From NCBI RefSeq assembly GCF_964204645.1, contig NC_134030.1:4072778-4136777 (forward strand): a DNA stretch of 64,000 nucleotides. The letters are read 5' to 3'. The stretch is from Tubulanus polymorphus. Taxonomy: Eukaryota; Animalia; Nemertea. Made by a program: the position numbers and the translations under genes. Below are positions 9,270-53,097 of this stretch, in pieces (position 1 is the stretch's first letter; each line of letters starts with the position of its first letter). The notes beneath the pieces were generated by a model. It saw only the letters and a program-made list of their open reading frames with translations, made no database searches and had not been told where the DNA came from.

Positions 9270-11830
9270 GCCTTATTCAAATACTGCTCGTTGCTGCTGT
9301 GTGTTTTTGATTTAGAGGTGATATTGAGAATTGTATCTCTTTCCCTTACCTTCGCGTATTACTACATTAAACATTATTACAATAGAATTATTACATTAAA
9401 CATTATAACATCATGAATCATTACATAATTACATTATTAAATTACACTGATGACCTCCTTTAATACTGCTGCTTGCTGCTGGTGTTAATTGATACACTCC
9501 GTTATGGGGTGATATTGAGTGCAGGAGTCTCCTCCTTCCTTCTTCAACTGTCATGTAGAAACTTGACATACGAACTGAATTATCAGTGTGTTACATCACT
9601 GATCACCTCCTTTAATACTGCTGCTTGCTGCTGGGTGTTAATTCTTTGATTTAGAGGTGATATTGAGAATTGTTTCTCTTTCCCTTACCTTCTTGAATTA
9701 TTACATTAAACATTATTACAATAGAATTATTACATTAAACATTATAACATCATGAATCATCCTCCTTAAATACTGCTGCTTGCTGCTTGGTGTTAATTGA
9801 TACACTCTGTTTTGGGGTGATATTGGGTGCAGGAGTCTCCTCCTTCCTTCTTCAACTGTCATGTAGCAGTTTGACAAACGGACTGAATTATCAGTGTGTT
9901 ACATCACTGATGACCTCCTTTAATACTGCTGTTTGCTGCTGGGTGTTAATTGATACACTCTGTTTTGGGGTGATATTGAGTGCAGAAGTCTCCTCCTTCC
10001 TCTTTCAACTGTCATGTAGAAACGTGACAAACGAACTGTATCATCAGTGTGTTACATCACTGATGACCTCCTTCAATACTGCTGCTTGCTGCTGGGTGTT
10101 AATTGATACACTTCGTTTTGGGGTGATATTGAGCGCAGGAGTCTCCTCCTTCCTCCTTCAACTGTCATGTAGAAACGTGACAAACGAACTGAATTATCAG
10201 TGTGTTACATCACTGATGACCTCCTTTAATACTGCTGCTTGCTGCTGGGTGTTAATTCTTTGATTTAGAGGTGATATTGAGAATTGTTTCTCTTTCCCTT
10301 ACCTTCTTGAATTATTACATTAAACATTATTACAATAGAATTATTACATTAAACATTATAACATCATGAATCATCCTCCTTAAATACTGCTGCTTGCTGC
10401 TGGGTTTTAATTGATACACTCTGTTTTGGGGTGATATTGGGTGCAGGAGTCTCCTCCTTCCTTCTTCAACTGCCATGTAGAAACGTGACAAACGAACTGA
10501 ATTATCAGTGTGTTACAACACTGATGACCTCCTTTAATACTGCTGCTTGCTGCTGGGTGTTAATTGATACACTCAGTTTTGGGGTGATATTGGGTGCAGG
10601 AGTCTCCTCCTTCCTTCTTCAACTGTCATGTAGCAGTTTGACAAACGGACTGAATTATCAGTGTGTTACATCACTGATGACCTCCTTAAATACTGCTGCT
10701 TGCTGCTGGGTGTTAATTCTTTGATTTAAAGGTGATATTGAGAATTGTTTCTCTTTCCCTTACCTTCTTGAATTATTACATTAAACATTATTACAATAGA
10801 ATTATTACATTAAACATTATAACATCATGAATCATTACATAATTACATTATCAAATTACACTGATGACCTCCTTTAATACTGCTGCTTGCTGCTGGGTGT
10901 TAATTGATACACTCCGTTATGGGGTGATATTGAGTGCAGGAGTCTCCTCCTTCCTTCTTCAACTGTCATGTAGAAACTTGACATACGGACTGAATTATCA
11001 GTGTGTTACATCACTGATGACCTCCTTCAATACTGCTGCTTGCTGCTGGGTGTTAATTCTTTGATTTAGAGGTGATATTGAGAATTGTTTCTCTTTCCCT
11101 TACCTTCTTGAATTATTACATTAAACATTATTACAATAGAATTATTACATTAAACATTATAACATCATGAATCATTACATAATTACATTATCAAATTACA
11201 CTGATGACCTCCTTTAATACTGCTGCTTGCTGCTGGGTGTTAATTGATACACTCCGTTATGGGGTGATATTGAGTGCAGGAGTCTCCTCCTTCCTTCTTC
11301 AACTGTCATGTAGAAACTTGACATACGGACTGAATTATCAGTGTGTTACATCACTGATGACCTCCTTCAATACTGCTGCTTGCTGCTGGGTGTTAATTGA
11401 TACACTTCGTTTTGGGGTGATATTGAGCGCAGGAGTCTCCTCCTTCCTCCTTCAACTCTCATGTAGAAACGTGACAAACGGACTGAATTGTAAGTGTGTT
11501 ACAACACTGATGGCCTCCTTTAATACTGCTGCTTGTTGCTGGGTGTTAATTGATACACTCTGTTTTGGGGTGATATTGAGTGCAGGAGTCTCCTCCTTCC
11601 TTCGTCAACTGTCATGTAGAAACGTGACAAACGGACTGAATTGTCAGTGTGTTACATCACTGATGACCTCCTTTAATACTGCTGCTTGCTGCTGGGTGTT
11701 AATTGATACACTCTGTTTTGGGGTGATAATGAGTTTAGGAGTCTCCTCCTTCCTTCTTCAACTGTCATGTAGAAACGTGACAAAAGAACTGAATTATCAG
11801 TGTGTTACAACACTGATGACCTCCTTTAAT
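9270..11830. repeat. Satellite with two related monomers (A 153 bp; B 187 bp or ~155 bp) in higher-order arrangement
   Basis: The shared head CTGATGACCTCCTTTAATACTGCTGCTTGCTGCTGGGTGTTAATT (few mismatches) occurs at 9447, 9599, 9907, 10060, 10213, 10521, 10674, 10861, 11014, 11201, 11354, 11507, 11660 and 11813 (truncated). Confidence 0.95.
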
Positions 11831-11844
11831 TTTAAATTTGAATT

Positions 11845-13445
11845 CTAAATTATTCAAAAGAGCTATCCATTGATAGCTTTGTGGTGGTTGTATCATTAAA
11901 ATGGCGCTGGTGTTGGGTCTGTGTACATATTGTATTATATGTCGGTGAATTGGGATTGATTATTTTGTTTCCTGATCGTCCTTATTGCGACTTTACGTTT
12001 TAAATGTATGAATATTCAAAAGAGCTATCCATTGATAGCTTTGTGGTGGTTGCATCTTTGAAATGTCATTGGTGTTGGTTCTGTGTACATATTGTATCAT
12101 ATGTCGCTGAATTATGATTGATTATTTTGTTTCCTGATCGTCCTTATTGCGACTTTACGTTTTAAATGTATAAATATTCAAAGGAGCTATCCATCGATAG
12201 CTATGTGGTAGTTGTATCATTGAAATGTCGCTGGTGTTGGTTCTCTATATATTGAATCATATGTCGCTGAATTATGATTGTTTCTGCTTCCCGATTGTCC
12301 TCATTAGGACTTAATGTTTAGAATTTGAAAATATTGAAAAGAGTTATCCATTGATAGCTTTGTGGTGGTTGTATCTTTCAAATGTCGCTGGTGTTGGTTC
12401 AGTGTATATATTTTGTCGGTGAATTGGGATTGATTATTTTGTTTCCTGATCGTCCTATAACGACTTAATGTTTTAAATGTATAAATATTCAAAAGAGCTA
12501 TCCATTGATAGCTTTGTGGTGGTTTGCATCTTTGAAATGTCGCTGGTGTTGGTTCTGTATATATTGAATCATATGTCGCTGAATTATGATTGATTCTGTT
12601 TCCTGATCGTCCTTATAACGATTTAAAGTTTTGAATGTATAAATATTCAAAGCAGCTATCTATCGATAGCTTTGTGGTGGTTGTATCATTGAAATGTCGC
12701 TGGTGTTGGTTCAATGTATATATTGTAATATATGTCGGTGAATTGGGATTGATTATTTTGTTTCCTGATCGTCCTTATAACGACTTAAAGTTTTAAATGT
12801 ATAAATATTCAAAGGAGCTATCCATCGATAGCTTTGTGGTGGTTGTATCATTGAAATGTCGCTGGTGTTGGTTCTGTGTACATATTGTATCGTATGTCGC
12901 TGAATTATGATTGATTCTGTTTCCTGATCGTCCTTATAACGACTTAAAGTTTTAAATGTATAAATATTCAAAGGAGCTATCCATTGATAGCTTTGTGGTG
13001 GTTGTATCATTGAAATGTCGCTGGTGTTGGTTCAATGTATATATTGTAATATATGTCGGTGAATTGGGATTGATTATTTTGTTTCCTGATCGTCCTTATT
13101 GCGACTTTACGTTTTAAATGTATAAATATTCAAGGTGCTATCCATTGATAGCTTTGTCGTGGTTGCATCTTTGAAATGTCGTTGGTGTTGGTTCTGTGTA
13201 CATATTGTATCATATGTCGCTGAATTACGATTGATTCTGCTTCCCGAATGTCCTCATTACGACTAAACGTTTAGATTGTAAAAATATTCAGAAGAGCTAT
13301 CCATTGATAGCTTTGTGGTGGTTGAATCTTTGAAATATCGCTGGTGTTGGTTCTGTGTATATATGGTATCAGCAAATTATCATTACATACGGAGTTGCGT
13401 TTTAAGATTGTTATATTCAAAGATGCTATTGTTTGATAGCTTAAA
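11845..13445. repeat. ~160-bp tandem repeat, ~10 copies
   Basis: The palindromic core AGCTATC-CATT-GATAGCT (or close variant) occurs at 11861, 12023, 12185, 12342, 12496, 12654, 12816, 12975, ~13136 and 13295. Confidence 0.95.
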
Positions 13446-20070: not shown

Positions 20071-23000
20071 TTAGATGTAGCTTCTCTTCTCCTCTTCATC
20101 GGGGTCGACAATTTTCCTTTTACGACACGACTGATATCCGAGCAGATCCAACACTTCGAACACCGTCAGAACACTGGCTCCGATAAATAAACCCATGGCA
20201 CCACCTATATCACCTGTAAGCACGACACAAAGACATCAAACAATAATTGGCTTTTGTTTCGATCTCGGTCGTTAACTAATGATCGTGTTTTTGCTACTCA
20301 CAAAGTAACGCGAATATATCGTAAGCGATCTGTTGTTCGACCAATTCGTAGTTCAGTTTGCGATAAAATATGTCGATTTGAAGGAAGTTCTCTCTGAAAT
20401 ATAAATATACGTATATACTCATGTATATTTATCTATTCGTAGCAATGTTACAAGTAGAAAATAAAAAAAGAGTCAAAGAGCAAAAAATTACTCTACTTTT
20501 ACTATTTACTTGGGGTGAGAAACATAGACATGTGCGTGATTATTTGAGGGGTTATTCCAATTATGTGTACGTAGATGCGTGATGAAGGTCACATCATGTA
20601 ACGACTTCAATATATTATACCTGCATTAGTTTACGGACTAGGTCCGATGTTTATGTGCTGAATGAAGTTTGAATTCGAATCGAATTTGAAACGTATTACG
20701 AACGATGCATATGATGTGTTGGTCTGATCGGCTGAATTTGTTGAAAAACAACCGCGCTTGCTTTGGTTTTCGATTAACATACAAGCATTCATAAACTCGT
20801 GGCCCAATCCGCCAATAATTTACCTGTAAAACTTAGTACCGATCTTATTATCGGCTAGATATTGTCTCTGCTGACTCATGAGACGCTGCAGGGATTCAGT
20901 TAATTCTATGTCTAGACCCGATACAGGATCGACCAAGTTGAATCCCGATTCGACCATTGCGGCGATGACACCCTTCTTGAACTCTGTATAATTGGTTTGC
21001 GCCCAACTGATGTTGCGACTGACCAGAGTATCGCTGTGTAGCCGGTAATAGGGCTGACTGTCCTCATCAGTCAGTATGAACTTCCAGATATCGAGGGATT
21101 GGCGCCGCATTTTCACCCAATTGTCCTATCATTAAAGAAACTTGACCATTAAATGTTCGTGTTAAATTTTAACACGACGGGCATTACCAGTGAAAAGTTG
21201 AAACATCCACAATTCAAACAACACCAATTGATACCCTTTACGTGCTACTCGCTTTTCCAGGGTTTTCCATGGGCGTGTATATAAGAGTGAAGGGACGAGG
21301 GATTTGGACTATTTAATGCTTACATGTTTTTTCCTAATTTCCTATTGCACAATAATATTTTTACTCTGGTTGCTGTGTTTTCTAACTATTATCATAGAAG
21401 TGTAAGTGATTACATGATATCATGTATCCACAATCTTTGTAACAAACGGATTATGCAAAATAAACTACAACTATGATTCGCCAACTTCTTTTTTCGCGAT
21501 GCTTCTGAATACTGAAAGTCGTCGTACGGTTTCGATTACCTTCAATGACTGCGTTCTCGTGCGCACCTCGTCAAAGTACGTGCTGATACCAGCGAGGATG
21601 TCTTCCATTCGTGGCGCAGTCGTCTGTCTAGAAATACTCGTCCATCCGATAGTTTGATTCGCCAAATAATCGTGCAACAAATTACTAGTTTCCAGGAATT
21701 GCGGCCACAGATTTGTGATCATCCATTTGACGCCCTTACGAAGACTGTTTAGATTTATTTTCATTTCTGAGTAGGTTTCGGAGACCGAAGATTTCAAGTC
21801 GTCGAATCGTTCGATGCGATCGGCGAGCACGCGTTCCGGGTACGAATACACGTCCGACAACATGAAATCGCGATCTCGGTAAAAACCGCGAATCGCCGAC
21901 AAAAATTCGTCGATGATCGCGCGCATTTTGAACGACGATTGAAACCCTTTATCGTAAACATGTCTCAGATAATCGGTCATATTATCGCAAACTTTGTCGA
22001 TACGTTTCAAGTGATCGGCGGCGCTTTGAATGTACCTTTTCACATTCGGCGTTCGCGTAACTGCGTCTTGAAGAAGTTGTATAGGCGCGATGATTCGAGC
22101 GTCTAATTCAGTGAAACTCTTGTACGGATAGTTGAATATAGCTTGACCGCGGTTGTAAGACGCAAACGCCTGCGTACAGTTCTCCAGGGCTAACAGCGCT
22201 AGGCCCTTACGCGCTTTGATCGCTTCGAACATGGTCAAATACAGCATTTGACGTTGGATGGGATCGTCGTTAACGGCGAAGACTAAACGGTTCAAATACT
22301 GTTCGTAAGTATGAACGAATGTGAAATATCCACGCGGTACTTCACTCCAGGTCGCTTCGTCCATAGCCATAACACCGCGATAGAAATTCTTCAGGCAGAC
22401 ATGTTGCTGTAACGACGAAACTCGTTTCTTCTTCCTCCACGCGGATATCAGTTCATCGAACGTATCATCGACGTGATCTGTGTATTTGATGACGGTGCTG
22501 TTTATCTTTACCAGGAGTTCTTCTACTTCCCGCGCTGCTCGCAGTATCCGGGCGATATTTTCCGAATTCTCGTTGAAGTATTTGTTCACAACAGCCGCCT
22601 TAGTGTCTCGAGCTTTTATGTAGCGTTCAAGAAGTGCCGAACTGTTGAGCATTGACTTAACCGTGTCAACGTCGAGATAAGACGTGGTCGAGTAGGAAAA
22701 ATTCGGTTCGTATATCGTGCTGGTACATGGAAGATCACATTTACACATATGCGCCATATATCGCCGATAATACACTGTTGAGAACAAACGTTTCCGATAA
22801 TACGACAGGTTACAAAATGTAGGGGATGCAAAAACACTTTAAAGAGGTCATCCATGCATAATTATAGCCTATATATTTCTAGCGTCCGATACCTACTTTT
22901 ATTTTCCTTTATGCAACTTTCTTGTGATATGGTGCAAACTGGTGGATTACCTACAAAATGAGCGATTAATGTTCTCGTCAGGCTCTATATATAGCTTTAA

Positions 23001-26000
23001 CAACCGTCTTACTCGTTATCAATTTCATTTGAACAAAGTACCATTTTTAGAAGGCATGTACGCTAATCGGCAACCACACATGGTCTCATAAAAGTTTGTT
23101 TTGCACGACATTCGGCACCCGACTTGCGAGTATGTTTCGTAATAGTGAGTTGGATTGCCTTCTGTGCAATTTCCGTGCGGTTTTGGCAAGTTCTTCATCT
23201 GCAAACGAACAAACAACTGTTTGCATAAAAATAAACGACATTTCTAGATATTTTCAAAAAAACGTGCATAACGTATATCAGAACATGTTTTCCAAATAGA
23301 TATCGCCTGACAACTGCCATTAATTAGCCCTTTATACAACGGCCATTAAAATCAATTTGTTGCTTCATATGCAAAAAAATGATTCGGCGCCATCGGGCTG
23401 TTTTATTTCAAAGCTTATAACTTGGATTTGTATTCGACATTGTAGAAGTTTGATAAACTTAGAAGCTCGTCTATGTGCTATGCTCCATCAGTCTTACCAC
23501 GGTAACTTTGATTCCAGCATACGTATGCGTTCCAGTTGATAGAGCTTGTCCCAAGTCGTGCACGAGTGGAACTTCGTTATGTTCGTACAGTAACATTTTG
23601 ATTCCTGCCGAATCATGGGGTCCTCTCATGTATTCGTATTGCTCCACGTTCATTATCAGTCGTAGACCGTTCTCTGAACCTAGAAAACGAAATGAAGATA
23701 AAACATACGATAGTTCACAGTCATTAATAAGTTTTTATTAATAGGGCTTTTGGAATCCAGGGCAAGATAGACTCAGAGAGGGACAGGGCCGGATCCAACG
23801 ATCTCAAGGGTTTTCCAAAAATATAAGGGCACTCAATAGTATGGGCTTTCGTATCCATGCCTCGCAAGCGCGAAGCCATTGAAGGGGTCTGGGTTGGGGA
23901 ACCTCCACCAGAAAATCTTTGGATAATTTTGGGCCATTCTGGTGGTTTTTGGAGGCATAAAAGCTGATTTGAAAAACATGACATTGATGCTAAGTTCTAA
24001 ACCAAGACTGAGAAGAAAAGGACTTGCTTTCAAGTGATAGGATAATGAAGTTTAACATTTCACTGATATGACACAAAAAATAACTTGTAATACATGTAAT
24101 GCAAAATAGAAACAAATGAATTGACATCTTTATCAACTTTCAAGTAGATTTTTTTAAAAAGGGTACGGGCAAAGCTCGACATTGTGTTCGCACCCCTCGA
24201 AGCCCCCTGGATCCGCTACTGGGTCCAATATGGGACTGGCTAAGCAACTTACCAGTTTCTGAGGATCTGATTGGAGGTTTCGCACCATGATTGAACGCAT
24301 AACAGGGGCCAAAATCCGTGAAAATCGGAACGAAATCATCCGAATCGCAGCGACCGTCATTCCAACGACACCTTCAACAAAATAAGCATCGTAATTATAA
24401 ACCGAACAATCGCTTTATACAAAATCGATTCGAAAATCATTCGAAAATCGCTTTGCAGATTTTACTGGTAACATAATTGCATGAATTAGAATTTTGTGCG
24501 AATGTACTTTAACACTTCGCCATTTTTAACGTCGGTATTCCTTTTTCCAACTTAATGGTGCTAATAGTGTTGTACTTTTATTGTAGCGATATAAACCTGT
24601 TAATAGTGATGTTTGTCTTGAATAATTGAGTCGCAATTCTAGTGGATCTGCGACGTATTGAAGCTTAAAAGCGATACGACTGGTTCTAGTTATCCATAGC
24701 GATAGTTGAAAAATAACTGCTGATAACGATGTTGTATTTATTTTATAAATTCGAATTCAAACAAATTGTTCTACTTGATATCTGCTGGTAGATTTCACCC
24801 GTCACGAACGCTTCAAATGTCTACCTCGCTAATTAACCAGATATTTTCGACGACCCTTGTCTCGAGTGGGAGGTTGACATAACAAAATATGACAACGCGA
24901 GGGCAGTGCATGAGGGCGAAATCAGAAAAACACTTTTTTTCTCATGTCCACCGGACGCTCCCGTACGAAGGCGATTATTTTTCAGGCACTGATATATTTC
25001 TATTACGATTTATTTCTCATTGCGGAATTATTTTCACTTGCGAACATATTTTGATGGAATTTATTTTAATTATGTGTCAAGAAAATATTTCATGGCCCTT
25101 ATCAGTCACTATACGTCTTACAATTCATGAAAGAATAGAGTTGTGAATCATGTTTATTCATTTATTCGTGGAAATATGAATCGGCATTTTGACAATTCGA
25201 TGCAGAAATAAATTCAAATCTTACCATACAATCATGTCCTCTTTTCTATGCGATGTTTTAGCGAGTAGTTCTTGTGAGTTGAGATTTTCAGCGTTGTACA
25301 TCGTTAGATTCAACTTCCAGCCGTCTCCGCCCTCTCTGTTGTGCATATCGTCCAGTAATGGATAGAGTCCCAATCGAGTAGCTTCAGTTACTCTTCAAAT
25401 AGATCCATACATTCATCGTAGGAATTAAAGTAATAATAATAGTAATAGTAATTTAGTAAAAGATGATAATAATTCATTTTCATTTTACAACTAAAGCATG
25501 TTCCGATGTCGCGATCTCAGAAATTTAAGAGAATGCTCAGAACACAATGAGAACAATTTCTGGGCATGATATATGATTTGAAAAGAGATTGTAGCAGGTT
25601 TCCCCCGTATATATATCATATTGTATATGAGCGTACGTAGTATGTATATAGACAAACACTTCCATGTAGAAACTGTTGTAATCCGACTAACCTAAACCAG
25701 TTCATGTTACAAAGAACCACTGACGGAAAAGTGAGAGTTTCATTAAAGTTGATCTCCACGTTGACGGTGACTGGATAACCGTAATAATAGATGATTCGAT
25801 CTACAATCTGCCTGGTCATCACTGCAGTGCATAAACTAATGACGAAAAACCAGGCTAATCTGAAACAAATGAACAACGAATAAAGCTACGTAACGTAGTC
25901 ATTTATGAATTGCTTAAGTAGTCTAGAAGTTCTGTCAATCAGAAATTACGATAGAATTTTTAATTACAGTCGAATTGGTCAGTTTTTCATTTAATTGTTT

Positions 26001-28109
26001 GTGGCATGAATAATTTAACTCGAAAGTTACATCAAGTTGGCAATTCTGTTTGAAAGAAATAACGATTATCGATGATATAAAGCTATACGCCTGAACCATT
26101 TGAAAAATGTACAAGAGATTCGAAACTACTCGACGTAGCAATGCGTGTTTGTTGTATGTGTAATAAAAATGAAGTAGAATCCGAATTACGTTTCCTTTGT
26201 GAATGCAACGCGTATCATGATTTAAGAAAAGACCTATACAACAAAACTGAAGATGTACTAACTGTTGATATAACATCCCTGTCAAGTACCGAGGTAGTAA
26301 CTCAAATTCTTTCAAATTGTAAAATAGTTAAATATGTTGGCATTATGTTGAAAGGATGTCCTTACGACGTAACGGTAACATGCCATGAATATGTTATATT
26401 TGTATGAAAGATTGTGTCTTGTAAGCCTTTTATAGCCTGGCTTTACTTGTAGAGATGACAATTTAATAAACTATATATATACCGATTTCCCACAGCTATA
26501 GATAATTCGATGCTAACCTGATTTTGTTCCGTAGAAAAAAAATATATATGATTTACGCGGAACGACATACATTTCCAATATCCAACTTTTTAAGAAAAAA
26601 ACGGCTTCTTTCCTGCTCTATTTATGCATGCATACTTAACGCATATTAGATTAACAATATGATATGCTTACAAAGTCCATTTACAAAAATTAATTACCGA
26701 AATGCAAACTACTGAGATCTATTACAGATAACAAAGTACCTTTTATTGCGCAATTTTCTGATATATCCACAATTTTTCGGTAGCATATAATTGAATTCAG
26801 AAAAAGCTCAGTGACCATTTAGGAACTTTTGTACAACAGTCGCAAGGGAATTAAGTACAGAAACAATTGAGTTATTCGCTGCCTTTCGTAAATCATAGTT
26901 GATTAGTAAAAACCACCGAATTGCGAATATTCCGTGTAACGATGATGCATTTCTTCATGTTTAATAAATCACTTTTTTTCGGACATAAAAAAGCGTAAAA
27001 AGCAATATGACCAAGGTCACACCGAGCATAATCTTATTTTCAGAACAAATCGGGTGATAAAACGACCTCGGAAATTAAGTTAGAAATAAGAGCGACAGAA
27101 AAATCGAACCAGGTTTTCCAAAGACTAAACAGCACATTCTGATCAAGATGAACATATTCAGTATATTTGAAACCCGACTTTGAAAAATAGCATTGGCGTC
27201 ATTGATGACTTAGTTAGGATTGCCTTCGAGGCAAATCAAATAATGACTTCATCGCACACGATGATCAGGGCCCTTGTGTGTAATATCGTGACCATTACAT
27301 ATGAATTTACTTTAAACGCACTGTTAACGGTCGTAAAATATACGTTTCATCAACTTTGAAAGGAATTATTATCTATTTTCCCGGATGCGAAATGATTTCG
27401 CCACGCGACATAAAATTTCGGGTCATAAACCTAACGGAAGCGTCCCGAGGACATAATTACTTCATAAAATCATAAAATTAAATAAAAATTCGATTTTTAA
27501 TTTTATGATTTTATCAATCGGCAAAAAAATTTAAAAAACAGTATTATGTCCCCAGGACGCTTCCGTATAAACCCGACTTAGAAACATTATACTTTCGTTT
27601 TTATTCTATAATATTAAAAATCAATTTGATTCAAAACATAAATATTCATGTACATTTTCATTCAAGCGAAGAAAGCCGTTCATTTAATCAACAGTAGGTT
27701 TTCGATATGGGCGAAGATCATGCGTGTCATCAACCTGGTGTCATACAGGACAAAACCAAGGGCCCATTTGCACAGTCGTGAGTCCAAAAGTGGTCTTGAC
27801 TGGTCTCGCTATAAAACGAAGATGGTCTAAGACTGATCGTGCTATTCTGTGTCCATGATATCTAAATATATTTACGTACCTTCTCAGAACGACCGAATCT
27901 TCGGCACTGACGTATCTGATACCATGAAAGGTCGTATTCTGTGTAAAATCGTAGAATGCATCCCTCCACGTCACCGGTTTTATTGTCAATTTTGGTTTCG
28001 GATAATGATGATCTCGATCGTTATGCACGTTCGGTTTCAAGTGGTTACTATCGTCTAAGACAGTCAAGTGGTATTTCGTATTCTCTGCTGCGTCGTCCTT
28101 TTTGGTCAT
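20071..28109 (-). CDS. DEG/ENaC (ASIC/BASIC-like) sodium channel subunit, 11 exons, 949 aa, with a ~480-aa extracellular insert
   Basis: Exons 28109-27880, 25859-25692, 25392-25225, 24371-24253, 23679-23498, 23198-23042, 22950-22897, 22774-21540, 21125-20824, 20393-20302, 20213-20071. All introns are GT-AG and phase-compatible; total 2850 nt. Motifs: TTFHG, TM1, FPSVVLCNMN, TDFGPCYAFN, GLRLIMNVEQYEY, Cys-rich thumb, CKCDLPC, DIGGAMGLFIGASVLTVFE. Confidence 0.93.
23784..24221. mobile_element. Non-autonomous TIR element (PIF/Harbinger-like ends) in a channel intron
   Basis: Left end CAGGGCCGGATCCA, right end TGGATCCGCTACTG (imperfect TIR); no clean TSD seen. Confidence 0.55.
26125..26480 (+). 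mobile_element. 5'-truncated non-LTR retrotransposon 3' end in channel intron 1
   Basis: RVCCMCNKNEVESELRFLCECNAYHDLR matches the LINE ORF2 C-terminal zinc-knuckle pattern (R.C..C...E.E.HFL..C..Y..LR); it is followed by AATAAA and a (TA)n tail. Confidence 0.75.
27434..27566. mobile_element. MITE-like inverted-repeat element
   Basis: ACGGAAGCGTCCCGAGGACATAAT ... ATTATGTCCCCAGGACGCTTCCGT; flanks ATAAACCTA and ATAAACCCG resemble a degraded 9-bp TSD. Confidence 0.7.
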
Positions 28110-29530: not shown

Positions 29531-32524
29531 ATGTTACACCGACTCGCGATACTTGTAATTTGCGTTCTCTTTCCCGAAAACCGATGTAAGTCTATTCTTT
29601 ATTATTTGTTTGATTTTATCTGAATTTGAATGATATTTAGAAATTGTTTTAGCGTGGTTTACGGAGAATGAGGTTTGTTTTGACGGACTCGGTTGTTTCA
29701 ACAATGAACATCCATTCGACAATGCGGCGCTTGTTTTACCAGATGAGCCATCAGAGGTTGGTACAGTGTTCTATCTGTTCACTCGTCACTCAGCGTCGCC
29801 ACAACTACTCGACTATACGCGTCAGGAAACACTGGAACAGTCGTTTTTTGATCCGTCGACACCGACGAAATTCATCATTCACGGTTTCAATAACGATGGT
29901 AAAACGAGTTGGGTGACAGAGATAGTCATAGCACTTCTCAATTTGGTAAGTAACGACAAACGATTTTAATAGGGAAGTTTCCAGTTACCAGACGCCATTT
30001 TGAGGCTCTCCCGCAGGTCCCGCATTGTTGGACAGATTTATTCGGCCAATGCATTCGTCCTCCAAGAGATGATGAGGGAATGTGTTGGCTCTCATAGTAC
30101 AGTAACATCGCTGCTACAGGCCCGATGGTACAGACACATAGTACACTATAGTCTGGACGGTCTCAAATGAACCGGTTGATAGCAATTACCCATTCCCTGA
30201 ACAGGTGGCAATGAATTGTTTCAATGTCCATAAAAAGGTATAATTCTCAGCAAGCGGAGAACACTGTCAATCATCGGTATATTGACATCAATTGCTATGA
30301 TCTTCGTGATTATTTTCACAGGAACCCATGAACGTCGTTGTCGTAGATTGGGGCCAAGGTGCGGCTTTTCCTCACTACGTACAAGCTGTCGCAAACAGCC
30401 GCTTGGTGGCGAGACAAACACGCGTTTTATTGGACCAGATGCGATCGTTAGGAGCCCGAATGAGCGAGGTGCATCTTATTGGCCACAGCATCGGGGCGCA
30501 CGTAGCTGGTTACATAGGCGCAGCGTTAAATGCATCAATTGGTAGAATTTCAGGTAAATCTGAATTTATCAACGACAGTCGACTTCAAATTAGCTATAGA
30601 CATCTAACGCGTATAAACGTATTTTGTAAAGGTCTTGATTTGGCGGACCCCCTTTACGGTGATCACGATAAGGCAGTTCGATTAGATGCGTCAGATGCCA
30701 AATTTGTCGACGTAATACACACGAACGCCCGACCGTTTCTGGAAGGAGGTTACGGTGATTACGAGGTGTCTGGTCACGTAGACTTCTACGTAAATGGCGG
30801 AATAGTACAACCAGGATGCGAAGGTCTTGTTGAAACGGTGAAGAACTTAGCTAAAGGTTTAGTGTCAGGTAACTTTTAAAAATCTAAATGATGCAATTCA
30901 TCTACAATCAGTTATTCGTCTATTGCGAAATTAGGTAAATGCTTCCTTTTTCCAATTTCCAGCCGCTACAAAAATACTGTCGTGTAGCCATAGTAGATCA
31001 CATGAAATATTCATTGAGTCTATCTATACGAAATGTCCATTCATCGCTTTTCCATGTAAAGATATGGTAAGTACGCGAGTGTGTTCCTGTTATTACACTG
31101 ACAACCATCAAAACATTATACTTGTGTATAGTAATTTTGTTCATTTATTAAGGCATATCAACGGAAATCGTAAAACGCTCAAAGGCAATGAGCATTGGAT
31201 TTTCAAAATCGTTCGGGAGGAGGGTTCCAAATTCAATTCCAACAAAATCAAAAGCGAACCCATCCCGGCCCCACATAAACATTCGCTACGGGCTTGACGT
31301 AGCCCAATATAATATAACTCTCTCGCATTGTCAATATGTATATCATACTGACGTGTTTCTTACTTTAGGATACTTTTATATGCGGACGATGTATGAGATG
31401 TCCAGAAGAAGGATGCATTCGTATGGGTTATCATTTGCACAAGCCTCCGATACGCGGGAAATTCTATATTGACACGAATAAAAGTCCACCGTATTGTGGT
31501 AAGCAGAATCTATCAAAACCTAAAACATGAAAACATGATGAAATATAAGAAAAAGTTTTAAAAAATTTAATTATCAAGTTTTATGGACTGTTTCACTTTT
31601 GTCTTGTTCATCTTCTGTCTTCGTTTAGGATACCATCACAGCCTCAAACTATTACCTATGAACGACGATGCTAAAGGTTACATCAATGCTCGCTTGTACG
31701 GAAGCGACTCCACGTCGGTAGAGAAAAAGATCTTCAAGTATGTCTGATGACAAATACTTATACAAATCTACGTAAACATTTGATACGATATTACGAGAGT
31801 GTTCACATAAACAACCCACAATTATTGATGATTAACAGTTCCAATTGGATTACAGCGTCAAAGCCGGCGCAACTGAACCAGAGAAAAGTCTTCTACTGAC
31901 TTACACCATAGACTATAAAACGATTCGTTTTACAGCCCATACTTACACTAAGATGCTAGTAAAATCCTCTCAAATGACGTATAATTTCGCTTGAAATGTG
32001 GGAGATTTACAACGTCGTGGTTCTGGATCGCCGCCATCTTGTGCTACAATCAAGAATGCGACTGTCCAAATTGATCACGCATTGCAGGAGCGTTCTGATA
32101 AGGACACTGACATTGGGAACATGTTTGAAGCAGAACTTGTAGGCCTACATAATACATCGGTAATTCATCGCCATTCTTGGTTTCAGTGAAGATTATGAGT
32201 ACGAAGCGGGTAAATACGCAGCCTGGGTGGTTGTTGTGAGGAATGATATCGGACATCCCAAAAGCATCGAACTAACTTATGTCAAACGGGAAGGTATATT
32301 TTGGGGAAGCGGAGCTGATCAGTTAGAAATAGAATCACTCATCCTAAAATCTGGCGTCACAGGAAACGAGTAAATATCTGTTTATTATATTTTCAAGATA
32401 ATGAGTCAATTTTGTAAGTAATATTTTGATTTTCTTACTTTTTAGGCATTATTATTGCGGTGATACACTGGTGCTAAATTCAGGCGAACCTAGAATCATA
32501 AAACTCTCAACAAATTCATGTTGA
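29531..32524 (+). CDS. Pancreatic lipase-related secreted lipase with C-terminal PLAT domain, 9 exons, 473 aa
   Basis: Exons 29531-29585, 29653-29945, 30322-30553, 30632-30868, 30963-31066, 31369-31498, 31629-31737, 32187-32369, 32446-32524. Signal peptide MLHRLAILVICVLF, EVCFDGLGCF, IIHGF, VVVVDW, catalytic GHSIG / GLD / CSH, DAKFVDVIHT; AATAAA at ~32553. Confidence 0.92.
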
Positions 32525-50955: not shown

Positions 50956-53097
50956 ATGCGCGTTTTGGGAAGAAGAATAGCCATCAGCGAATTGGAGTCT
51001 AGCCCGCCTCGTAATTTGGGTATAGTCATCGATACGTTGAAGAATGCTGTAGATGATGTATTAGCGAAGTTAGGAATACTCGAAAAGGAATATTGTCGGC
51101 CGTATCCGGATATATGTCGGGAAATTAAACAATGGCTTCCTCATCTAAAAGACGTGGCGCGGGCTTTACATCTGCGGGAACTATCGTCTGCGAAATTAGT
51201 CGATGCTATATTCGTTCAAGTCGACACACCGGGCGTGGTCGTCGCTGCCGATCCGGACGATTTGGAGAAACTGAAAGAAGTGACGAAAAAAGTGAAACAT
51301 TTCGTCCCCAATAAATTTGAGGAATGCCTCAGTATTATCGATAAAGTGATGATGTTCTTGCAGAAGTTTTGCCTGTCGTTCTACGATATGGCAAACGACC
51401 CGGATTACGAAACCGGTCAACATTATTCGTTGAGTATGATTCACTGGAAAGAGTCGATGAAACAGAAACTAGACAGCGTTCGTCGTCTCGCTATGAAGTT
51501 CGCGGTCGATTCCGTCTTCCCGATGCACCTGTGCGCCGCCGCGCAGAAAATCGTCACCAAGACCGAATCAGAACGATTCGCTTTCCTGTCGCTTTTCACG
51601 CACGTTTCCGAAACTATCCGCGAAGTGTGCGATACGCTGAAAGACTGGATCAAAATGGAGGAAAACTATCCGGAATTCCTGGCGCACGATATCAAAGATT
51701 TGGAAAAACAAAAGACGGCGCTGTCCAGGAAAACCCGCGACGCGCAAGAGGCCCACTTTCAAGCGATACACCGAATTAAGAATATCGACGCACAACGCTC
51801 GAAAAATGATAAACAGGATAAAATACTGAAAATAAAAGCGGACAATCTGATCGTCGAAGAAGAGATGTTGATCCGATATATATCCGAAACGAAAGTCGAC
51901 ATCGACATAAGAAAATTTCAAAAAGAGGAACTGATTAGAAACATCGGCAGTTCGGACGGCGCCGAACTTCGCGAGAAATTCGACGAAATACGCGAAGATA
52001 TGAGAATCCTCAAGGATCGTCTCCCAACCCTCGAAAAGCGTATGGTTTTTGTAAAGGAAAAACTCGATTGGATCGACAACGAACGAGACTGCCTGGAGAA
52101 CAAAAATCATGAACTGTTGCTGGAGAAACAAAGCTTGTCGAAAACGGGCGACGAAAAGAGCCGTTGTGAAAACGAACTCGATAAAGTAACCCGGTTGTTA
52201 GAACACGTTAAACTGATGGCGTTGTTTAAAATGTCGCCTGATGTTCTGGTGAAAATTCACTACGGTATACCATACGAAATGAAAACTCATTCGACGAAAT
52301 TAGCCTCGGATAAACACGAGATAAGTGAGTAATAACTGCATACAGAATAACATAGTCCCCATAAATGTCTATATGAAATTATGCGAACGAAACTCTTGAT
52401 TCAAAATTAGGAGACTTTTACTTATCTAGTGTGAGATCATGAAAACTGAAATTGCACGGTAAGAGAAGCACACATTGGTTTTTTGCTTGTTTTCTGGGAT
52501 CAATGAGTTTAGGGGTCGTCAACATAAAACGTATTGTATATGATATATGAAGTTATGCGTACGCAACTCTGATTCAAAACATAAGGCTGTTATGCAGTAT
52601 GATCATGAAAACTGAAATTGTATGGCGAAAGAAGACAGAGCACATACCGATCTGTGTAAAGTTCACTTCTTAATGTATTATTTTCTTCAGATTTGTTAGA
52701 TCGGGCGTGTAATGTAGTGGCCGAAGAAATCAGTAAAGACTGGCCGTCGTTATATTCGCTATTGCCGTTCCTTCCACCTCGAGGTCGTCTGAATATTGAA
52801 GCCGATATACAAGATATTACCCGTTCTTACCCACGCGACAGTCACGCCGACCAGGCTCTGAAATCTTTGTACAGATGGCGTCGATTTCACATACGAGCCA
52901 GACTACAAGATCTGAAAACCACATTGGCGCAGATGAATCGTCAAGATGTACTGGACGTTGTGGAATATACGCTTAATCCGCCCGTTAATTCTACAGAGGT
53001 GAAGGAAAGTACTCTTCCGACTTTTCTCGAACCGCACCTCATACCGTATTACCGGGCTGTCGAACGTTACGACCAACTACGTGCATCTCATGGTTGA
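50956..53097 (+). CDS. Coiled-coil protein with C-terminal death domain, 2 coding exons, 591 aa
   Basis: Exons 50956-52324 and 52691-53097 (phase 1). Long K/E-rich heptad region, then a death-fold pattern: VAEEISKDWPSLYSLL...IQDI...DQALKSLYRWR...ARLQDLKTTLAQMNRQDV. Confidence 0.85.
52368..52645. repeat. Diverged ~100-bp direct duplication in the intron
   Basis: TATATGAA(A/G)TTATGCG...GATTCAAAA...GATCATGAAAACTGAAATTG occurs twice. Confidence 0.7.

What the first reader, a model, noticed from the sequence alone, without database searches (positions are those of the whole stretch)
20824..22700. DEG/ENaC channel with a ~480-aa helical domain grafted into the knuckle
Seen: the splice model is frame-consistent (2850 nt). 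It places about 480 residues, from most of one 1235-nt exon plus a 302-nt exon, between the post-thumb strand (PCTSTIYEPNFSYS) and ENFLQIDIFY. The insert is amphipathic-helical, Cys-poor, has several N-glycosylation sequons (NSS, NST, NCT, NMT, NQT, NIS, NYT) and a polybasic RKKKR. Established: in ASIC1/ENaC this interval is the short two-helix knuckle of a few tens of residues at the apex of the trimer, and ENaC is gated by proteolysis. Inference: the trimer would carry three long helical bundles projecting from its top. These could act as a built-in tether for mechanogating, a ligand-binding domain or a cleavable inhibitory cap. I know of no characterised channel with this architecture.
Basis: partly seen in the sequence, partly recalled or inferred. 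Interest (0 to 1): 0.82.

Follow-up and report, generated by a model that had tools for sequence, protein, structure and literature searches.

The report
Sodium channel with giant knuckle domain
A ribbon-worm (Tubulanus polymorphus) gene for an ASIC-like DEG/ENaC sodium-channel subunit really carries a folded, all-helical, probably glycosylated extra domain of about 470 residues at the top of its outer part; ribbon worms, molluscs, an annelid and a brachiopod share this build, it lies unnamed in public databases, I found no paper describing it, and its function is untested.

Summary
Each exon maps to the window with canonical AG/GT sites.

Against chicken ASIC1, 472 residues (386-857) stand where ASIC1 has 10. 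The insertion lies between strand beta10 and knuckle helix alpha6, and the two knuckle helices are kept (858-872).

The insert is a real domain:
- 104 database clusters match it, from Nemertea, Mollusca, Annelida and Brachiopoda.
- Every member tested is a split ASC channel, and insert length is conserved.
- AlphaFold2 with the alignment gives pLDDT 87, all helical, with helices up to 78 residues.
- One N-glycosylation sequon is kept in 46 of 54 sequences.
- The genome holds at least 22 such genes.

No Pfam family or known fold matches beyond generic four-helix bundles. The polybasic RKKKR is unique to this protein, so the cleavable-cap idea is unsupported.

My best mechanism, which is inference at about 0.4, is an extracellular partner-binding antenna coupled to the gate through the knuckle and palm.

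I found no paper describing this. The scan had already found the same build on other DNA of this genome. RNA reads could not be obtained.

The parts
27864..28109 (-). Coding exon 1 (N-terminus, HG motif FHGI at residues 61-64). The 3' boundary is approximate.
   Evidence: tblastn of P0001 residues 1-82. HSP ends only; splice sites not read.
25685..25861 (-). Coding exon 2 (TM1 and the start of the extracellular domain). Boundaries approximate.
   Evidence: tblastn residues 77-135. Pfam ASC profile 22-79. Hydrophobic segment at about residues 72-96.
25224..25394 (-). Coding exon 3. Boundaries approximate.
   Evidence: tblastn residues 133-189, 100% identity.
24251..24370 (-). Coding exon 4. Boundaries approximate.
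   Evidence: tblastn residues 190-229, 100% identity.
23492..23680 (-). Coding exon 5 (beta-ball/palm). Boundaries approximate.
   Evidence: tblastn residues 229-291. Pfam ASC profile 210-267.
23042..23198 (-). Coding exon 6 (thumb, Cys-rich).
   Evidence: tblastn residues 290-342. Donor GT at 23041-23040 read. Pfam ASC profile 265-323.
22897..22950 (-). Coding exon 7 (54 nt, thumb).
   Evidence: AG before 22950 and GT at 22896-22895 read. tblastn.
21540..22774 (-). Coding exon 8 (1235 nt). It encodes the last thumb cysteines, strand beta10 (residues 377-388) and the first 383 residues of the insert (389-771).
   Evidence: Splice sites read. tblastn residues 361-771. 104 database clusters match it.
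21126..21539 (-). Intron inside the insert (phase 0), specific to this gene. If retained, it would end the frame at the stop at 21473-21471.
   Evidence: GT and AG read. Paralogues L002-L004 encode the same stretch in one open frame. Residues conserved on both sides of the junction (R764, R766, D772, W785). The model helix 747-789 runs across it.
20824..21125 (-). Coding exon 9 (302 nt). It encodes the last 86 residues of the insert and the retained knuckle helices alpha6/alpha7 (residues 858-872).
   Evidence: Splice sites read. tblastn 100% identity. Alignment to chicken ASIC1 386-401.
20302..20393 (-). Coding exon 10 (92 nt): palm strands beta11-beta12 (ENFLQIDIFY...).
   Evidence: Splice sites read. 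Pfam ASC profile 399-431. Alignment to chicken ASIC1.
20071..20213 (-). Coding exon 11 (143 nt): TM2 with the GAS motif, a short C-terminus and the TAA stop.
   Evidence: Read. Pfam ASC profile 430-454. Hydrophobic segment at about residues 894-929.
20869..22698 (-). The inserted helical domain proper: protein residues 386-857, interrupted by the intron at 21539-21126. These stand opposite the 10-residue beta10/alpha6 loop of chicken ASIC1. The window coordinates are computed from the exon map.
   Evidence: boundaries; fold; conservation.

Best explanation
What it is (shown, about 0.95). This is a single 11-exon gene for an ASIC-like DEG/ENaC channel subunit of Tubulanus polymorphus. The loop between palm strand beta10 and knuckle helix alpha6 has been replaced by a self-contained, all-helical, extracellular domain of about 470 residues that carries N-glycosylation sequons. 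It belongs to an old lophotrochozoan subfamily that has expanded in this ribbon worm.

How it most likely works (inference, about 0.4). The domain is a receptor or antenna module. It stands on the outer top corner of each subunit and binds an external partner, either a soluble or surface-bound ligand or another macromolecule. It passes that event to the pore through its two anchor points: beta10, which runs down the palm, and alpha6/alpha7, which lead into beta11-beta12 and TM2. In this way it gates or tunes an otherwise ordinary Na+ channel core. The many fast-diverging paralogues would then be channels with different ligand specificities.
For: Gene and architecture:
- The exon map equals RefSeq XP_074652886.1, with canonical splice sites.
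- Pfam ASC scores 305 bits in two stretches. There are only two TM-like segments and none inside the insert. The HG and GAS motifs are present.
- Chicken ASIC1 is the closest solved relative (E 3e-59), and residues 386-857 face ASIC1 376-385.

A real, selected domain:
- 104 clusters match at E<=1e-3. Named members come from two nemerteans, many gastropods, bivalves and cephalopods, the annelid Dimorphilus and the brachiopod Lingula.
- ASC is split in two stretches in the 10 full-length members scanned and in 3 of 4 more.
- Insert length is 477-492 residues in 28 of 35 aligned members.
- All 20 closest relatives of the channel core are 791-966 aa long, so all carry an insert.
- AlphaFold2 gives pLDDT 86.9 and pTM 0.76 with the alignment, against 37 without it.
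- A 3791-nt Logan contig carries an uninterrupted 957-aa scallop homologue. It is most simply read as a transcript.

Extracellular and glycosylated:
- Sequons are twice as frequent as in composition shuffles (318 against 159.5 in 35 members).
- N558 is kept in 46 of 54 sequences.

A receptor-like evolutionary pattern:
- The insert diverges faster than the core: 35/27/23% identity against 55/51/45% for the same three proteins.
- The genome has 5 loci of this type plus 17 checked loci of a second, more divergent type with giant beta10 exons, many in a tandem cluster at C6:7.10-7.17 Mb.
- The second type is homologous over the first ~150 profile columns (hhalign probability 99%, E 7e-18).

A position that matters for gating:
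- In the FaNaC1 structure, alpha6 of the knuckle forms part of the neuropeptide pocket. The authors call this outer corner important for gating across the superfamily (PMC11026163).

Conserved patches inside the insert:
- The motif KNFxRxxxAMEERT at residues 489-501.
- A non-helical stretch rich in aromatic residues and Pro (G569, Y575, P590, L593-L594).
Against: - No partner, ligand, current or expression site is known.
- Fold searches give only generic helical-bundle likeness: Foldseek against the PDB has its best E at 9e-3. VIA-align reaches Z 13.7 to designed bundles and Z 9-11 to 4HB sensor domains and to talin/vinculin, inside the tool's stated background for helical proteins. The Atlas gives TM<=0.36.
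- Conserved motifs could be folding core and not a binding site.
- The trimer context was not modelled, so where the bundle points is not known.
- The faster divergence of the insert also fits relaxed constraint on a spacer.
Confidence: 0.4

Rival explanations
1. Built-in mechanical tether or gating spring. The long glycosylated helical rod links the channel to extracellular matrix or glycocalyx. Displacement pulls on beta10 and the knuckle and opens the pore (force from filament).
For: - N-glycans in the palm and knuckle of alpha-ENaC are needed for shear-force responses and are proposed as matrix tethers (PMC6955349).
- One sequon is conserved in 46 of 54 sequences and sequons are two-fold enriched.
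- Helices reach 78 residues, about 115 A if straight.
- There is weak likeness to the force-bearing bundles of talin, vinculin and alpha-catenin, Z 9-10.
- Several DEG/ENaCs are mechanosensory (established knowledge).
Against: - A tether to a common matrix would be expected to be conserved and low in copy number. Here the insert diverges faster than the core, and there are at least 22 paralogues in tandem arrays.
- The bundle likeness lies within background for helical proteins.
- No matrix-binding motif or domain was found.
Confidence: 0.25
2. Passive structural module. It could be a spacer, a glycan shield, or an assembly and sorting domain that sets which subunits form a trimer or holds the channel at a given distance from another surface. 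It would have no direct role in gating.
For: - The fold is self-contained and confidently predicted as a monomer (pTM 0.76).
- There are no conserved cysteines and no recognisable binding domain.
- Sequence constraint is low over much of the domain, with mean column identity of 0.21-0.35 in many 20-residue windows.
- A large paralogue family would need rules for assembly.
Against: - Length and helix pattern have been kept across four phyla.
- Specific polar motifs and a glycan site are conserved.
- The insertion sits next to alpha6, a gating-relevant corner.
Confidence: 0.2
3. Cleavable inhibitory cap. A protease cuts at the polybasic RKKKR and releases an autoinhibitory domain, as furin and other proteases do with the inhibitory tracts of ENaC.
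For: - A polybasic run at residues 472-476 in an extracellular domain.
- ENaC is activated by proteolysis (established knowledge; searches list such papers).
Against: - RKKKR is present only in this protein among 35 aligned relatives. The close paralogue P0003 has D-DWND and the Lineus orthologue-like P0002 has K-RKAT at these columns.
- It does not fit R-x-K/R-R.
- It lies in the middle of a 78-residue helix with pLDDT about 94, which is a poor protease substrate.
- ENaC's cleaved tracts are in the finger (GRIP) domain, not the knuckle.
Confidence: 0.04
4. Gene-model artefact. The large open frame would belong to another gene or a mobile element lying in an intron, and real transcripts would skip it.
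For: No RNA reads could be laid on this locus. The RefSeq model is a computed prediction.
Against: - beta10 and the last thumb cysteines, which the fold needs, lie in the same open frame and the same exon as the insert.
- Skipping the 1235-nt exon, or the 1235-nt and 302-nt exons together, shifts the frame (1235 mod 3 = 2; 1537 mod 3 = 1).
- The arrangement is colinear in four paralogues and in database proteins of four phyla.
- A scallop homologue is uninterrupted on a 3.8-kb contig.
- There is no transposon or Pfam match.
Confidence: 0.02

Closest known systems
Acid-sensing ion channel 1 (chicken ASIC1, PDB 6ave/2qts) and the ASIC/BASIC branch of DEG/ENaC
   Same: - It is the best solved relative (E 3e-59, 204 bits; ASIC5/BASIC scores 163 bits).
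- Residues 54-385 and 858-931 align colinearly with ASIC1 21-375 and 386-459.
- The HG motif, Cys-rich thumb, palm strands, knuckle helices alpha6/alpha7 and the GAS belt in TM2 are all present.
   Different: - 472 residues stand where ASIC1 has the 10-residue beta10/alpha6 loop.
- In the alignment, the positions facing two determinants of proton gating recalled from the literature (the His after TM1 and the Lys in the palm/beta-ball; the literature uses rat ASIC1a numbering) hold Val and Glu here. A classical proton-gated ASIC is therefore unlikely.
- Placement inside or outside the ASIC clade was not tested by a tree.
FMRFamide-gated channels (FaNaC; PDB 8on7, 7yvb)
   Same: - It is a lophotrochozoan DEG/ENaC.
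- The ligand pocket uses the outer top corner formed by the finger and knuckle alpha6 (PMC11026163). The insert here emerges at the same corner.
   Different: - The sequence relation is much weaker (94 and 57 bits).
- FaNaC has an enlarged finger, not an enlarged knuckle, and no large helical domain.
ENaC alpha/beta/gamma (PDB 6wth, 9blr)
   Same: - Same superfamily.
- The knuckle matters functionally: knuckle and palm N-glycans are needed for shear sensing (PMC6955349).
- The extracellular domain carries regulatory extras (GRIP domain).
   Different: - ENaC's extra tracts lie in the finger and are removed by proteases. Here the extra domain is at the knuckle, is about 470 residues long, is folded, and has no conserved cleavage site.
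- ENaC beta scores only 102 bits.
C. elegans DEL-10, whose name RefSeq borrowed for this protein
   Same: Both are DEG/ENaC subunits of unknown gating. DEL-10 gave no distinct current in an oocyte pH screen (PMC10424705).
   Different: The name is an automatic best-hit label. I did not see any nematode among the 40 named relatives of the insert or core. I could not fetch the DEL-10 sequence, so whether it has any knuckle insert was not tested.
Four-helix-bundle sensor domains of bacterial chemoreceptors and kinases (4HB/HBM: Tsr, PcaY, McpZ, TorS), and the talin/vinculin bundles
   Same: All-helical antiparallel bundles built from long helices. VIA-align gives Z 9-11 over 130-175 residues of model residues ~110-310.
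   Different: - The scores lie within the background that the tool states for helical bundles. Designed bundles score higher (Z 13.7).
- Sequence identity is 4-12%.
- This is no evidence of common descent or of shared function.

Membership tests
DEG/ENaC superfamily (Pfam PF00858 ASC) | Significant match to the ASC profile above the curated cut-off | tested here: met
   P0001 scores 305.1 bits against a cut-off of 23.6, in two stretches covering profile 1-415 and the remainder. Single exons also match.
DEG/ENaC superfamily (Pfam PF00858 ASC) | Two transmembrane segments flanking one large extracellular domain, with short cytoplasmic ends | tested here: met
   Kyte-Doolittle 19-residue windows reach 1.4 or more only at about residues 72-96 and 894-929. 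The maximum inside the insert is 1.19.
DEG/ENaC superfamily (Pfam PF00858 ASC) | HG motif before TM1 and G/S-x-S (GAS) selectivity motif in TM2 | tested here: met
   FHGI at residues 61-64 and FIGASVLT in TM2. They align to the same motifs of chicken ASIC1.
DEG/ENaC superfamily (Pfam PF00858 ASC) | Colinear palm/thumb/beta-ball/knuckle extracellular fold with conserved cysteines | tested here: met
   phmmer alignment to 6ave_A over residues 54-385 and 858-931, with the thumb cysteines aligned. The fold of the channel part itself was not predicted here.
DEG/ENaC superfamily (Pfam PF00858 ASC) | Trimeric, amiloride-sensitive Na+-selective channel | not testable with these tools
   Needs expression and electrophysiology, or a multimer model or structure.
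ASIC proper (proton-gated clade) | Residues tied to proton gating (the His after TM1 and the Lys in the palm/beta-ball; rat ASIC1a numbering, recalled from the literature and not read here) | tested here: not met
   In the alignment, chicken YPHVTKL faces YPVTVNV (His to Val), and the Lys of TMKGG faces Glu. The mapping rests on a pairwise alignment and on recalled residue identities, so treat it as provisional.
ASIC proper (proton-gated clade) | Placement inside the ASIC clade in a superfamily tree | not tested
   No outgroup set could be fetched. There are only score ranks: ASIC1 204 bits, ASIC5 163, ENaC beta 102, FaNaC 94.
Lophotrochozoan 'giant-knuckle' DEG/ENaC group (unnamed; defined here) | A helical domain of about 470-540 residues, homologous to alignment A1, between beta10 and alpha6 | tested here: met
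   The window protein is the first row of A1. 104 clusters match its insert exon. ASC is split in the 10 full-length members and in 3 of 4.
ENaC-type proteolytically released inhibitory tract | Conserved furin-type sites flanking a tract whose removal activates the channel | tested here: not met
   There is one polybasic run, RKKKR. It does not fit R-x-K/R-R, it is absent from all 34 other aligned sequences shown, and it lies inside a helix. Cleavage itself is not testable here.
4HB/HBM extracellular sensor domains | Structural match standing clearly above unrelated helical bundles, plus a conserved ligand pocket | tested here: inconclusive
   Z 9-11 to Tsr, PcaY, TorS and McpZ, which is below designed bundles (Z 13.7) and within the tool's stated helical background. 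Foldseek finds nothing at E<=1e-3.

The most novel reading that the evidence does not exclude
The giant knuckle domain is a new kind of gating module for DEG/ENaC channels. It would be a built-in extracellular receptor or tether that lets the channel be opened directly by a macromolecular partner, matrix displacement or a diverse set of environmental ligands. The 20-odd fast-diverging paralogues in the ribbon worm would then form a previously unrecognised sensory receptor family of lophotrochozoans.
Probability: 0.3. Interest if true: 0.8.

Novelty: new variant of a known kind. Interest (0 to 1): 0.6.

Why it matters
The extracellular scaffold of DEG/ENaC channels (palm, thumb, finger, knuckle) is otherwise very uniform. 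How mechanical or macromolecular cues reach the gate is a long-standing open question, and the proposed extracellular tethers have never been identified as protein domains of the channel itself.

A conserved, separately folding domain of about 470 residues sits exactly at the knuckle corner. That corner forms part of the peptide pocket in FaNaC and carries the shear-sensing glycans in ENaC. The domain therefore gives a direct, testable handle: it can be deleted, swapped between paralogues, or expressed alone to fish for partners.

It also marks an unnamed channel subfamily present across molluscs, ribbon worms, annelids and brachiopods. Superfamily surveys have included sequences from these animals, but the papers I read do not comment on the insert.

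Tried and rejected
- The joined spliced model. I did not build or search it myself. The exons were searched by reference. For whole-protein work I used P0001, the public RefSeq protein returned by the database search, which tblastn maps exon by exon on the window.
- Single-sequence AlphaFold2 of the 411-aa exon gave a useless model (pLDDT 37). The alignment-based job replaced it.
- The word-index search with the insert (P0001 389-872) found only the protein itself. The relatives are too divergent to share 5-mers.
- Pfam on the insert gave only sub-threshold noise: DUF3456, HisKA, DUF4455 and Intron_maturas2, all below their cut-offs.
- Fold searches gave no specific fold (Foldseek PDB, VIA-align wide, ESM Atlas fold, Atlas features).
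- I rejected a transposon or foreign ORF lying in an intron, and a two-gene reading (see rivals).
- I rejected the furin-type cap.
- Literature. Six searches and seven papers read by term (plus the outline) found no description of a knuckle insert. A seventh attempt failed on a disallowed search term. The library lacks most subscription journals, so absence is not proven.
- I could not fetch C. elegans DEL-10 to see whether the borrowed name reflects a shared insert.
- I could not obtain model coordinates, so I did not map conservation onto the surface or measure the domain.
Full report
**Observation**

The stretch lies in a minus-strand gene. Open frames with Pfam ASC (PF00858) matches run from about 25876 down to 20071.

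I read the splice sites on the reverse strand:
- The 1235-nt exon is 22774-21540 (AG at 22776-22775, GT at 21539-21538).
- The 302-nt exon is 21125-20824 (AG at 21127-21126, GT at 20823-20822).
- Then come 20393-20302 and 20213-20071, which ends in TAA.

The open frame that holds the conserved strand ...CDLPCTSTIYEPNFSYS runs on without a stop for 438 codons in DNA of about 40% GC. That is not a chance frame.

**The model is a public protein**

An exhaustive HMMER search with the translated 1235-nt exon returned a 949-aa protein that is 100% identical over residues 361-771 (P0001). This is RefSeq XP_074652886.1, 'degenerin-like protein del-10 [Tubulanus polymorphus]'.

Whole-protein steps used this database protein by its id.

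**Where exactly the insert sits**

phmmer against all PDB chains gives chicken ASIC1 as the closest solved relative (6ave_A, E 3e-59). It scores ahead of ASIC5 (163 bits), ENaC beta (102 bits) and FaNaC (94 bits).

Residues 54-385 align to ASIC1 21-375, and residues 858-931 align to ASIC1 386-459. So 472 residues (386-857) face the 10-residue loop between strand beta10 and knuckle helix alpha6.

The knuckle helices themselves are retained (RQYLADNKIGTKFYR, 858-872) and lead into ENFLQIDIFY (beta11).

The refinement is that the knuckle is kept and the graft enters at its N-terminal loop.

The protein has only two TM-like segments, the HG motif and the GAS motif.

**Is the insert a real domain?**

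Yes, on several independent grounds:

1. The same genome (268 Mb, 77 contigs) holds three paralogues of the exon at 27, 25 and 20% identity. Each is full-length, free of stops and embedded in an ASC gene, with the beta10 motif in the same open frame and a TM2 exon downstream. In those three the whole insert is one exon. The intron at 21539-21126 is therefore specific to this gene. The residues on both sides of it (R764, R766 | D772, W785) are conserved across the family, and a confidently predicted helix (747-789) crosses the junction. This validates the 21540/21125 junction without RNA.

2. 104 clusters at 50% identity match the exon at E<=1e-3, and 56 match at E<=1e-10. Named members come from:
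   - Tubulanus and Lineus (Nemertea)
   - Haliotis, Patella, Babylonia, Batillaria, Elysia, Littorina and Plakobranchus (gastropods)
   - Pecten, Argopecten, Mytilus, Ruditapes, Mercenaria, Saccostrea, Ostrea and Mya (bivalves)
   - Octopus and Argonauta (cephalopods)
   - Dimorphilus (Annelida)
   - Lingula (Brachiopoda)

. All are labelled uncharacterized, ASIC-like or del-10-like.

3. The ASC profile is split in two stretches in all 10 full-length members scanned and in 3 of 4 more.

4. The region is 477-492 residues long in 28 of 35 aligned members.

5. All 20 nearest relatives of the channel core (residues 50-388, 38-55% identity) are 791-966 aa long, so all carry the insert.

6. A 3791-nt Logan contig (SRR23580857) carries an uninterrupted 957-aa scallop member with flanking untranslated sequence. 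It is most simply read as a spliced transcript, although I could not check the run type.

7. AlphaFold2 gives pLDDT 37 from the single sequence but 86.9 (pTM 0.76) with a 54-row alignment, with 351 of 525 residues at pLDDT 90 or more.

**What the domain looks like**

It is all helical, with long helices. In model numbering (add 370 for protein numbering) these are 53-130, 161-198, 232-265, 270-299, 301-361 and 377-419.

One non-helical stretch lies at 199-231. A 78-residue helix would span about 115 A if straight. That figure is my arithmetic, not a measured model distance.

Other properties:
- There are no conserved cysteines (0-5 per insert).
- N-x-S/T sequons are twice as frequent as in composition shuffles (318 against 159.5 in 35 members; 7 against 3.3 in this protein, P about 0.04).
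- One sequon, N558-C-T, is kept in 46 of 54 sequences, and NIS809 in 26 of 45.
- The most conserved positions cluster in KNFxRxxxAMEERT (489-501), around N558, and in the aromatic- and Pro-rich stretch with G569, Y575, P590 and L593-594.

**Known folds and families**

- Pfam gives nothing above threshold for the insert.
- Foldseek against the PDB has no match at E<=1e-3.
- VIA-align's best rows are designed four-helix bundles (Z 13.7). It also lists 4HB sensor domains (Tsr, PcaY, TorS, McpZ) and talin, vinculin and alpha-catenin bundles at Z 9-11. All lie within the background the tool states for helical proteins.
- ESM Atlas shape and feature searches give TM<=0.36 and no usable hit.

So residues ~480-680 form a four-helix bundle in the generic sense. 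No descent or function can be read from that.

**The cleavable-cap idea**

- RKKKR (472-476) is found in none of the other 34 aligned sequences shown.
- It has Lys at P4.
- It lies in the middle of the longest helix, where pLDDT is about 94.

I rate this idea at about 0.04.

**Family size in this genome**

The A1 profile finds 5 full-length loci of this type. It also finds about 18 loci where only the first ~100 profile positions match but the open frame is 392-602 aa.

I fetched 17 of them. Each is a giant open frame. Sixteen begin with C-x-x-PC plus a beta10-like strand, and L021 has CPPQC at that place. Most end in an I-x-I-x-E-x-F motif like the knuckle helix here.

Their alignment (A2) matches A1 with hhalign probability 99% and E 7e-18, but only over the first ~150 columns. 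They are therefore probably very divergent descendants of the same insertion. Ten lie in a tandem cluster at C6:7.10-7.17 Mb.

The ASC profile hits about 40 or more loci in the genome in total, so roughly half carry a giant beta10 exon. Both numbers are lower bounds or rough counts.

**Mechanism**

Shown: an intact ASIC-like channel core carrying an extra, folded extracellular domain with conserved glycosylation sequons at the beta10/alpha6 loop.

Inferred: the rest.

I favour (about 0.4) a partner-binding antenna that gates or tunes the channel. The reasons are:
- The insert diverges faster than the core. Identities are 35, 27 and 23% for the insert against 55, 51 and 45% for the core in P0002, P0003 and P0007.
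- The family has expanded in tandem, which is the pattern of receptor families.
- It emerges beside alpha6, which helps to form the neuropeptide pocket of FaNaC1, in a corner called important for gating across the superfamily (PMC11026163).
- Its two anchor points continue directly into the palm strands that lead to TM2.

The mechanical-tether reading (about 0.25) draws on the ENaC knuckle and palm glycans needed for shear sensing (PMC6955349) and on the conserved glycan here. It fits the many fast-diverging paralogues less well.

A passive spacer or assembly role (about 0.2) cannot be excluded.

The positions facing two ASIC1 proton-gating determinants appear substituted (the residue identities are recalled from the literature). 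I would therefore not expect a classical proton-gated ASIC.

**Novelty and literature**

Six full-text searches and term look-ups in the main phylogeny and structure papers found no mention of a knuckle insert or of this group.

Surveys that included Lineus, Dimorphilus, Lingula and mollusc sequences exist (PMC9949801, PMC9234716). One of them removed sequences over 1000 aa.

The sequences are public but unnamed. The library lacks most subscription journals, so absence of a description is not proven.

Earlier notes of this scan on other windows of the same genome describe the same build. I used them only as leads. I re-derived the organism, the phyla and the paralogue count here.

**Limits**

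- No trimer model.
- No model coordinates.
- No superfamily tree.
- C. elegans DEL-10 was not examined.

Noticed in passing
window 21126-21539 (minus strand): The intron that splits the insert in this gene is absent from the three closest paralogues (L002, L003, L004), where the whole insert is one exon of 515-619 open codons. It is therefore a recent intron gain in this gene, or a loss in the others.
   Followed up: partly
G000:C6:7.10-7.17 Mb (L005, L010, L016-L018, L020, L021, L023) and other places (L006, L007, L011-L015, L019, L022): A second, much more divergent set of DEG/ENaC genes with giant beta10 exons (392-600 open codons), ten of them in one tandem cluster. Only the first ~150 columns are detectably homologous to this gene's insert (hhalign E 7e-18).
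   Followed up: partly
L011 (G000:C4:8.83 Mb) and L012 (G000:C6:9.87 Mb): Two 425-codon giant-exon open frames on different contigs. As printed, they are identical over the first 45 residues after the PC motif and nearly identical at the end. This suggests a very recent duplication between chromosomes, or an assembly duplicate.
   Followed up: no
G000:C3:5626911-5628374: A complete conventional ASC open frame (profile 1-455 in one 544-codon frame, no stops). It is an intronless DEG/ENaC gene without the insert and would be a useful within-genome comparator.
   Followed up: no
window 30328-30879 (+): A 183-codon open frame with a lipase-type serine motif (HLIGHSIGAH). It looks like an exon of a pancreatic-lipase-family gene.
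   Followed up: no
window 9787-11848 (+): Open frames made of a repeated unit of roughly 50 residues (…CCWVLIDTL.FGVILSAGVSSFLLQLSC…). This is a tandem DNA repeat of about 150 bp and probably not coding.
   Followed up: no
window 50956-52332 and 52693-53097 (+): A 458-codon open frame rich in charged, coiled-coil-like sequence, followed by a 134-codon frame. This is an unrelated neighbouring gene of unknown kind.
   Followed up: no
L009 (Logan SRR23580857 contig, 3791 nt): An uninterrupted 957-aa scallop member of the family with about 100 nt upstream and 800 nt downstream. It is probably an mRNA contig. The run type and tissue were not checked and could give a first expression clue.
   Followed up: partly
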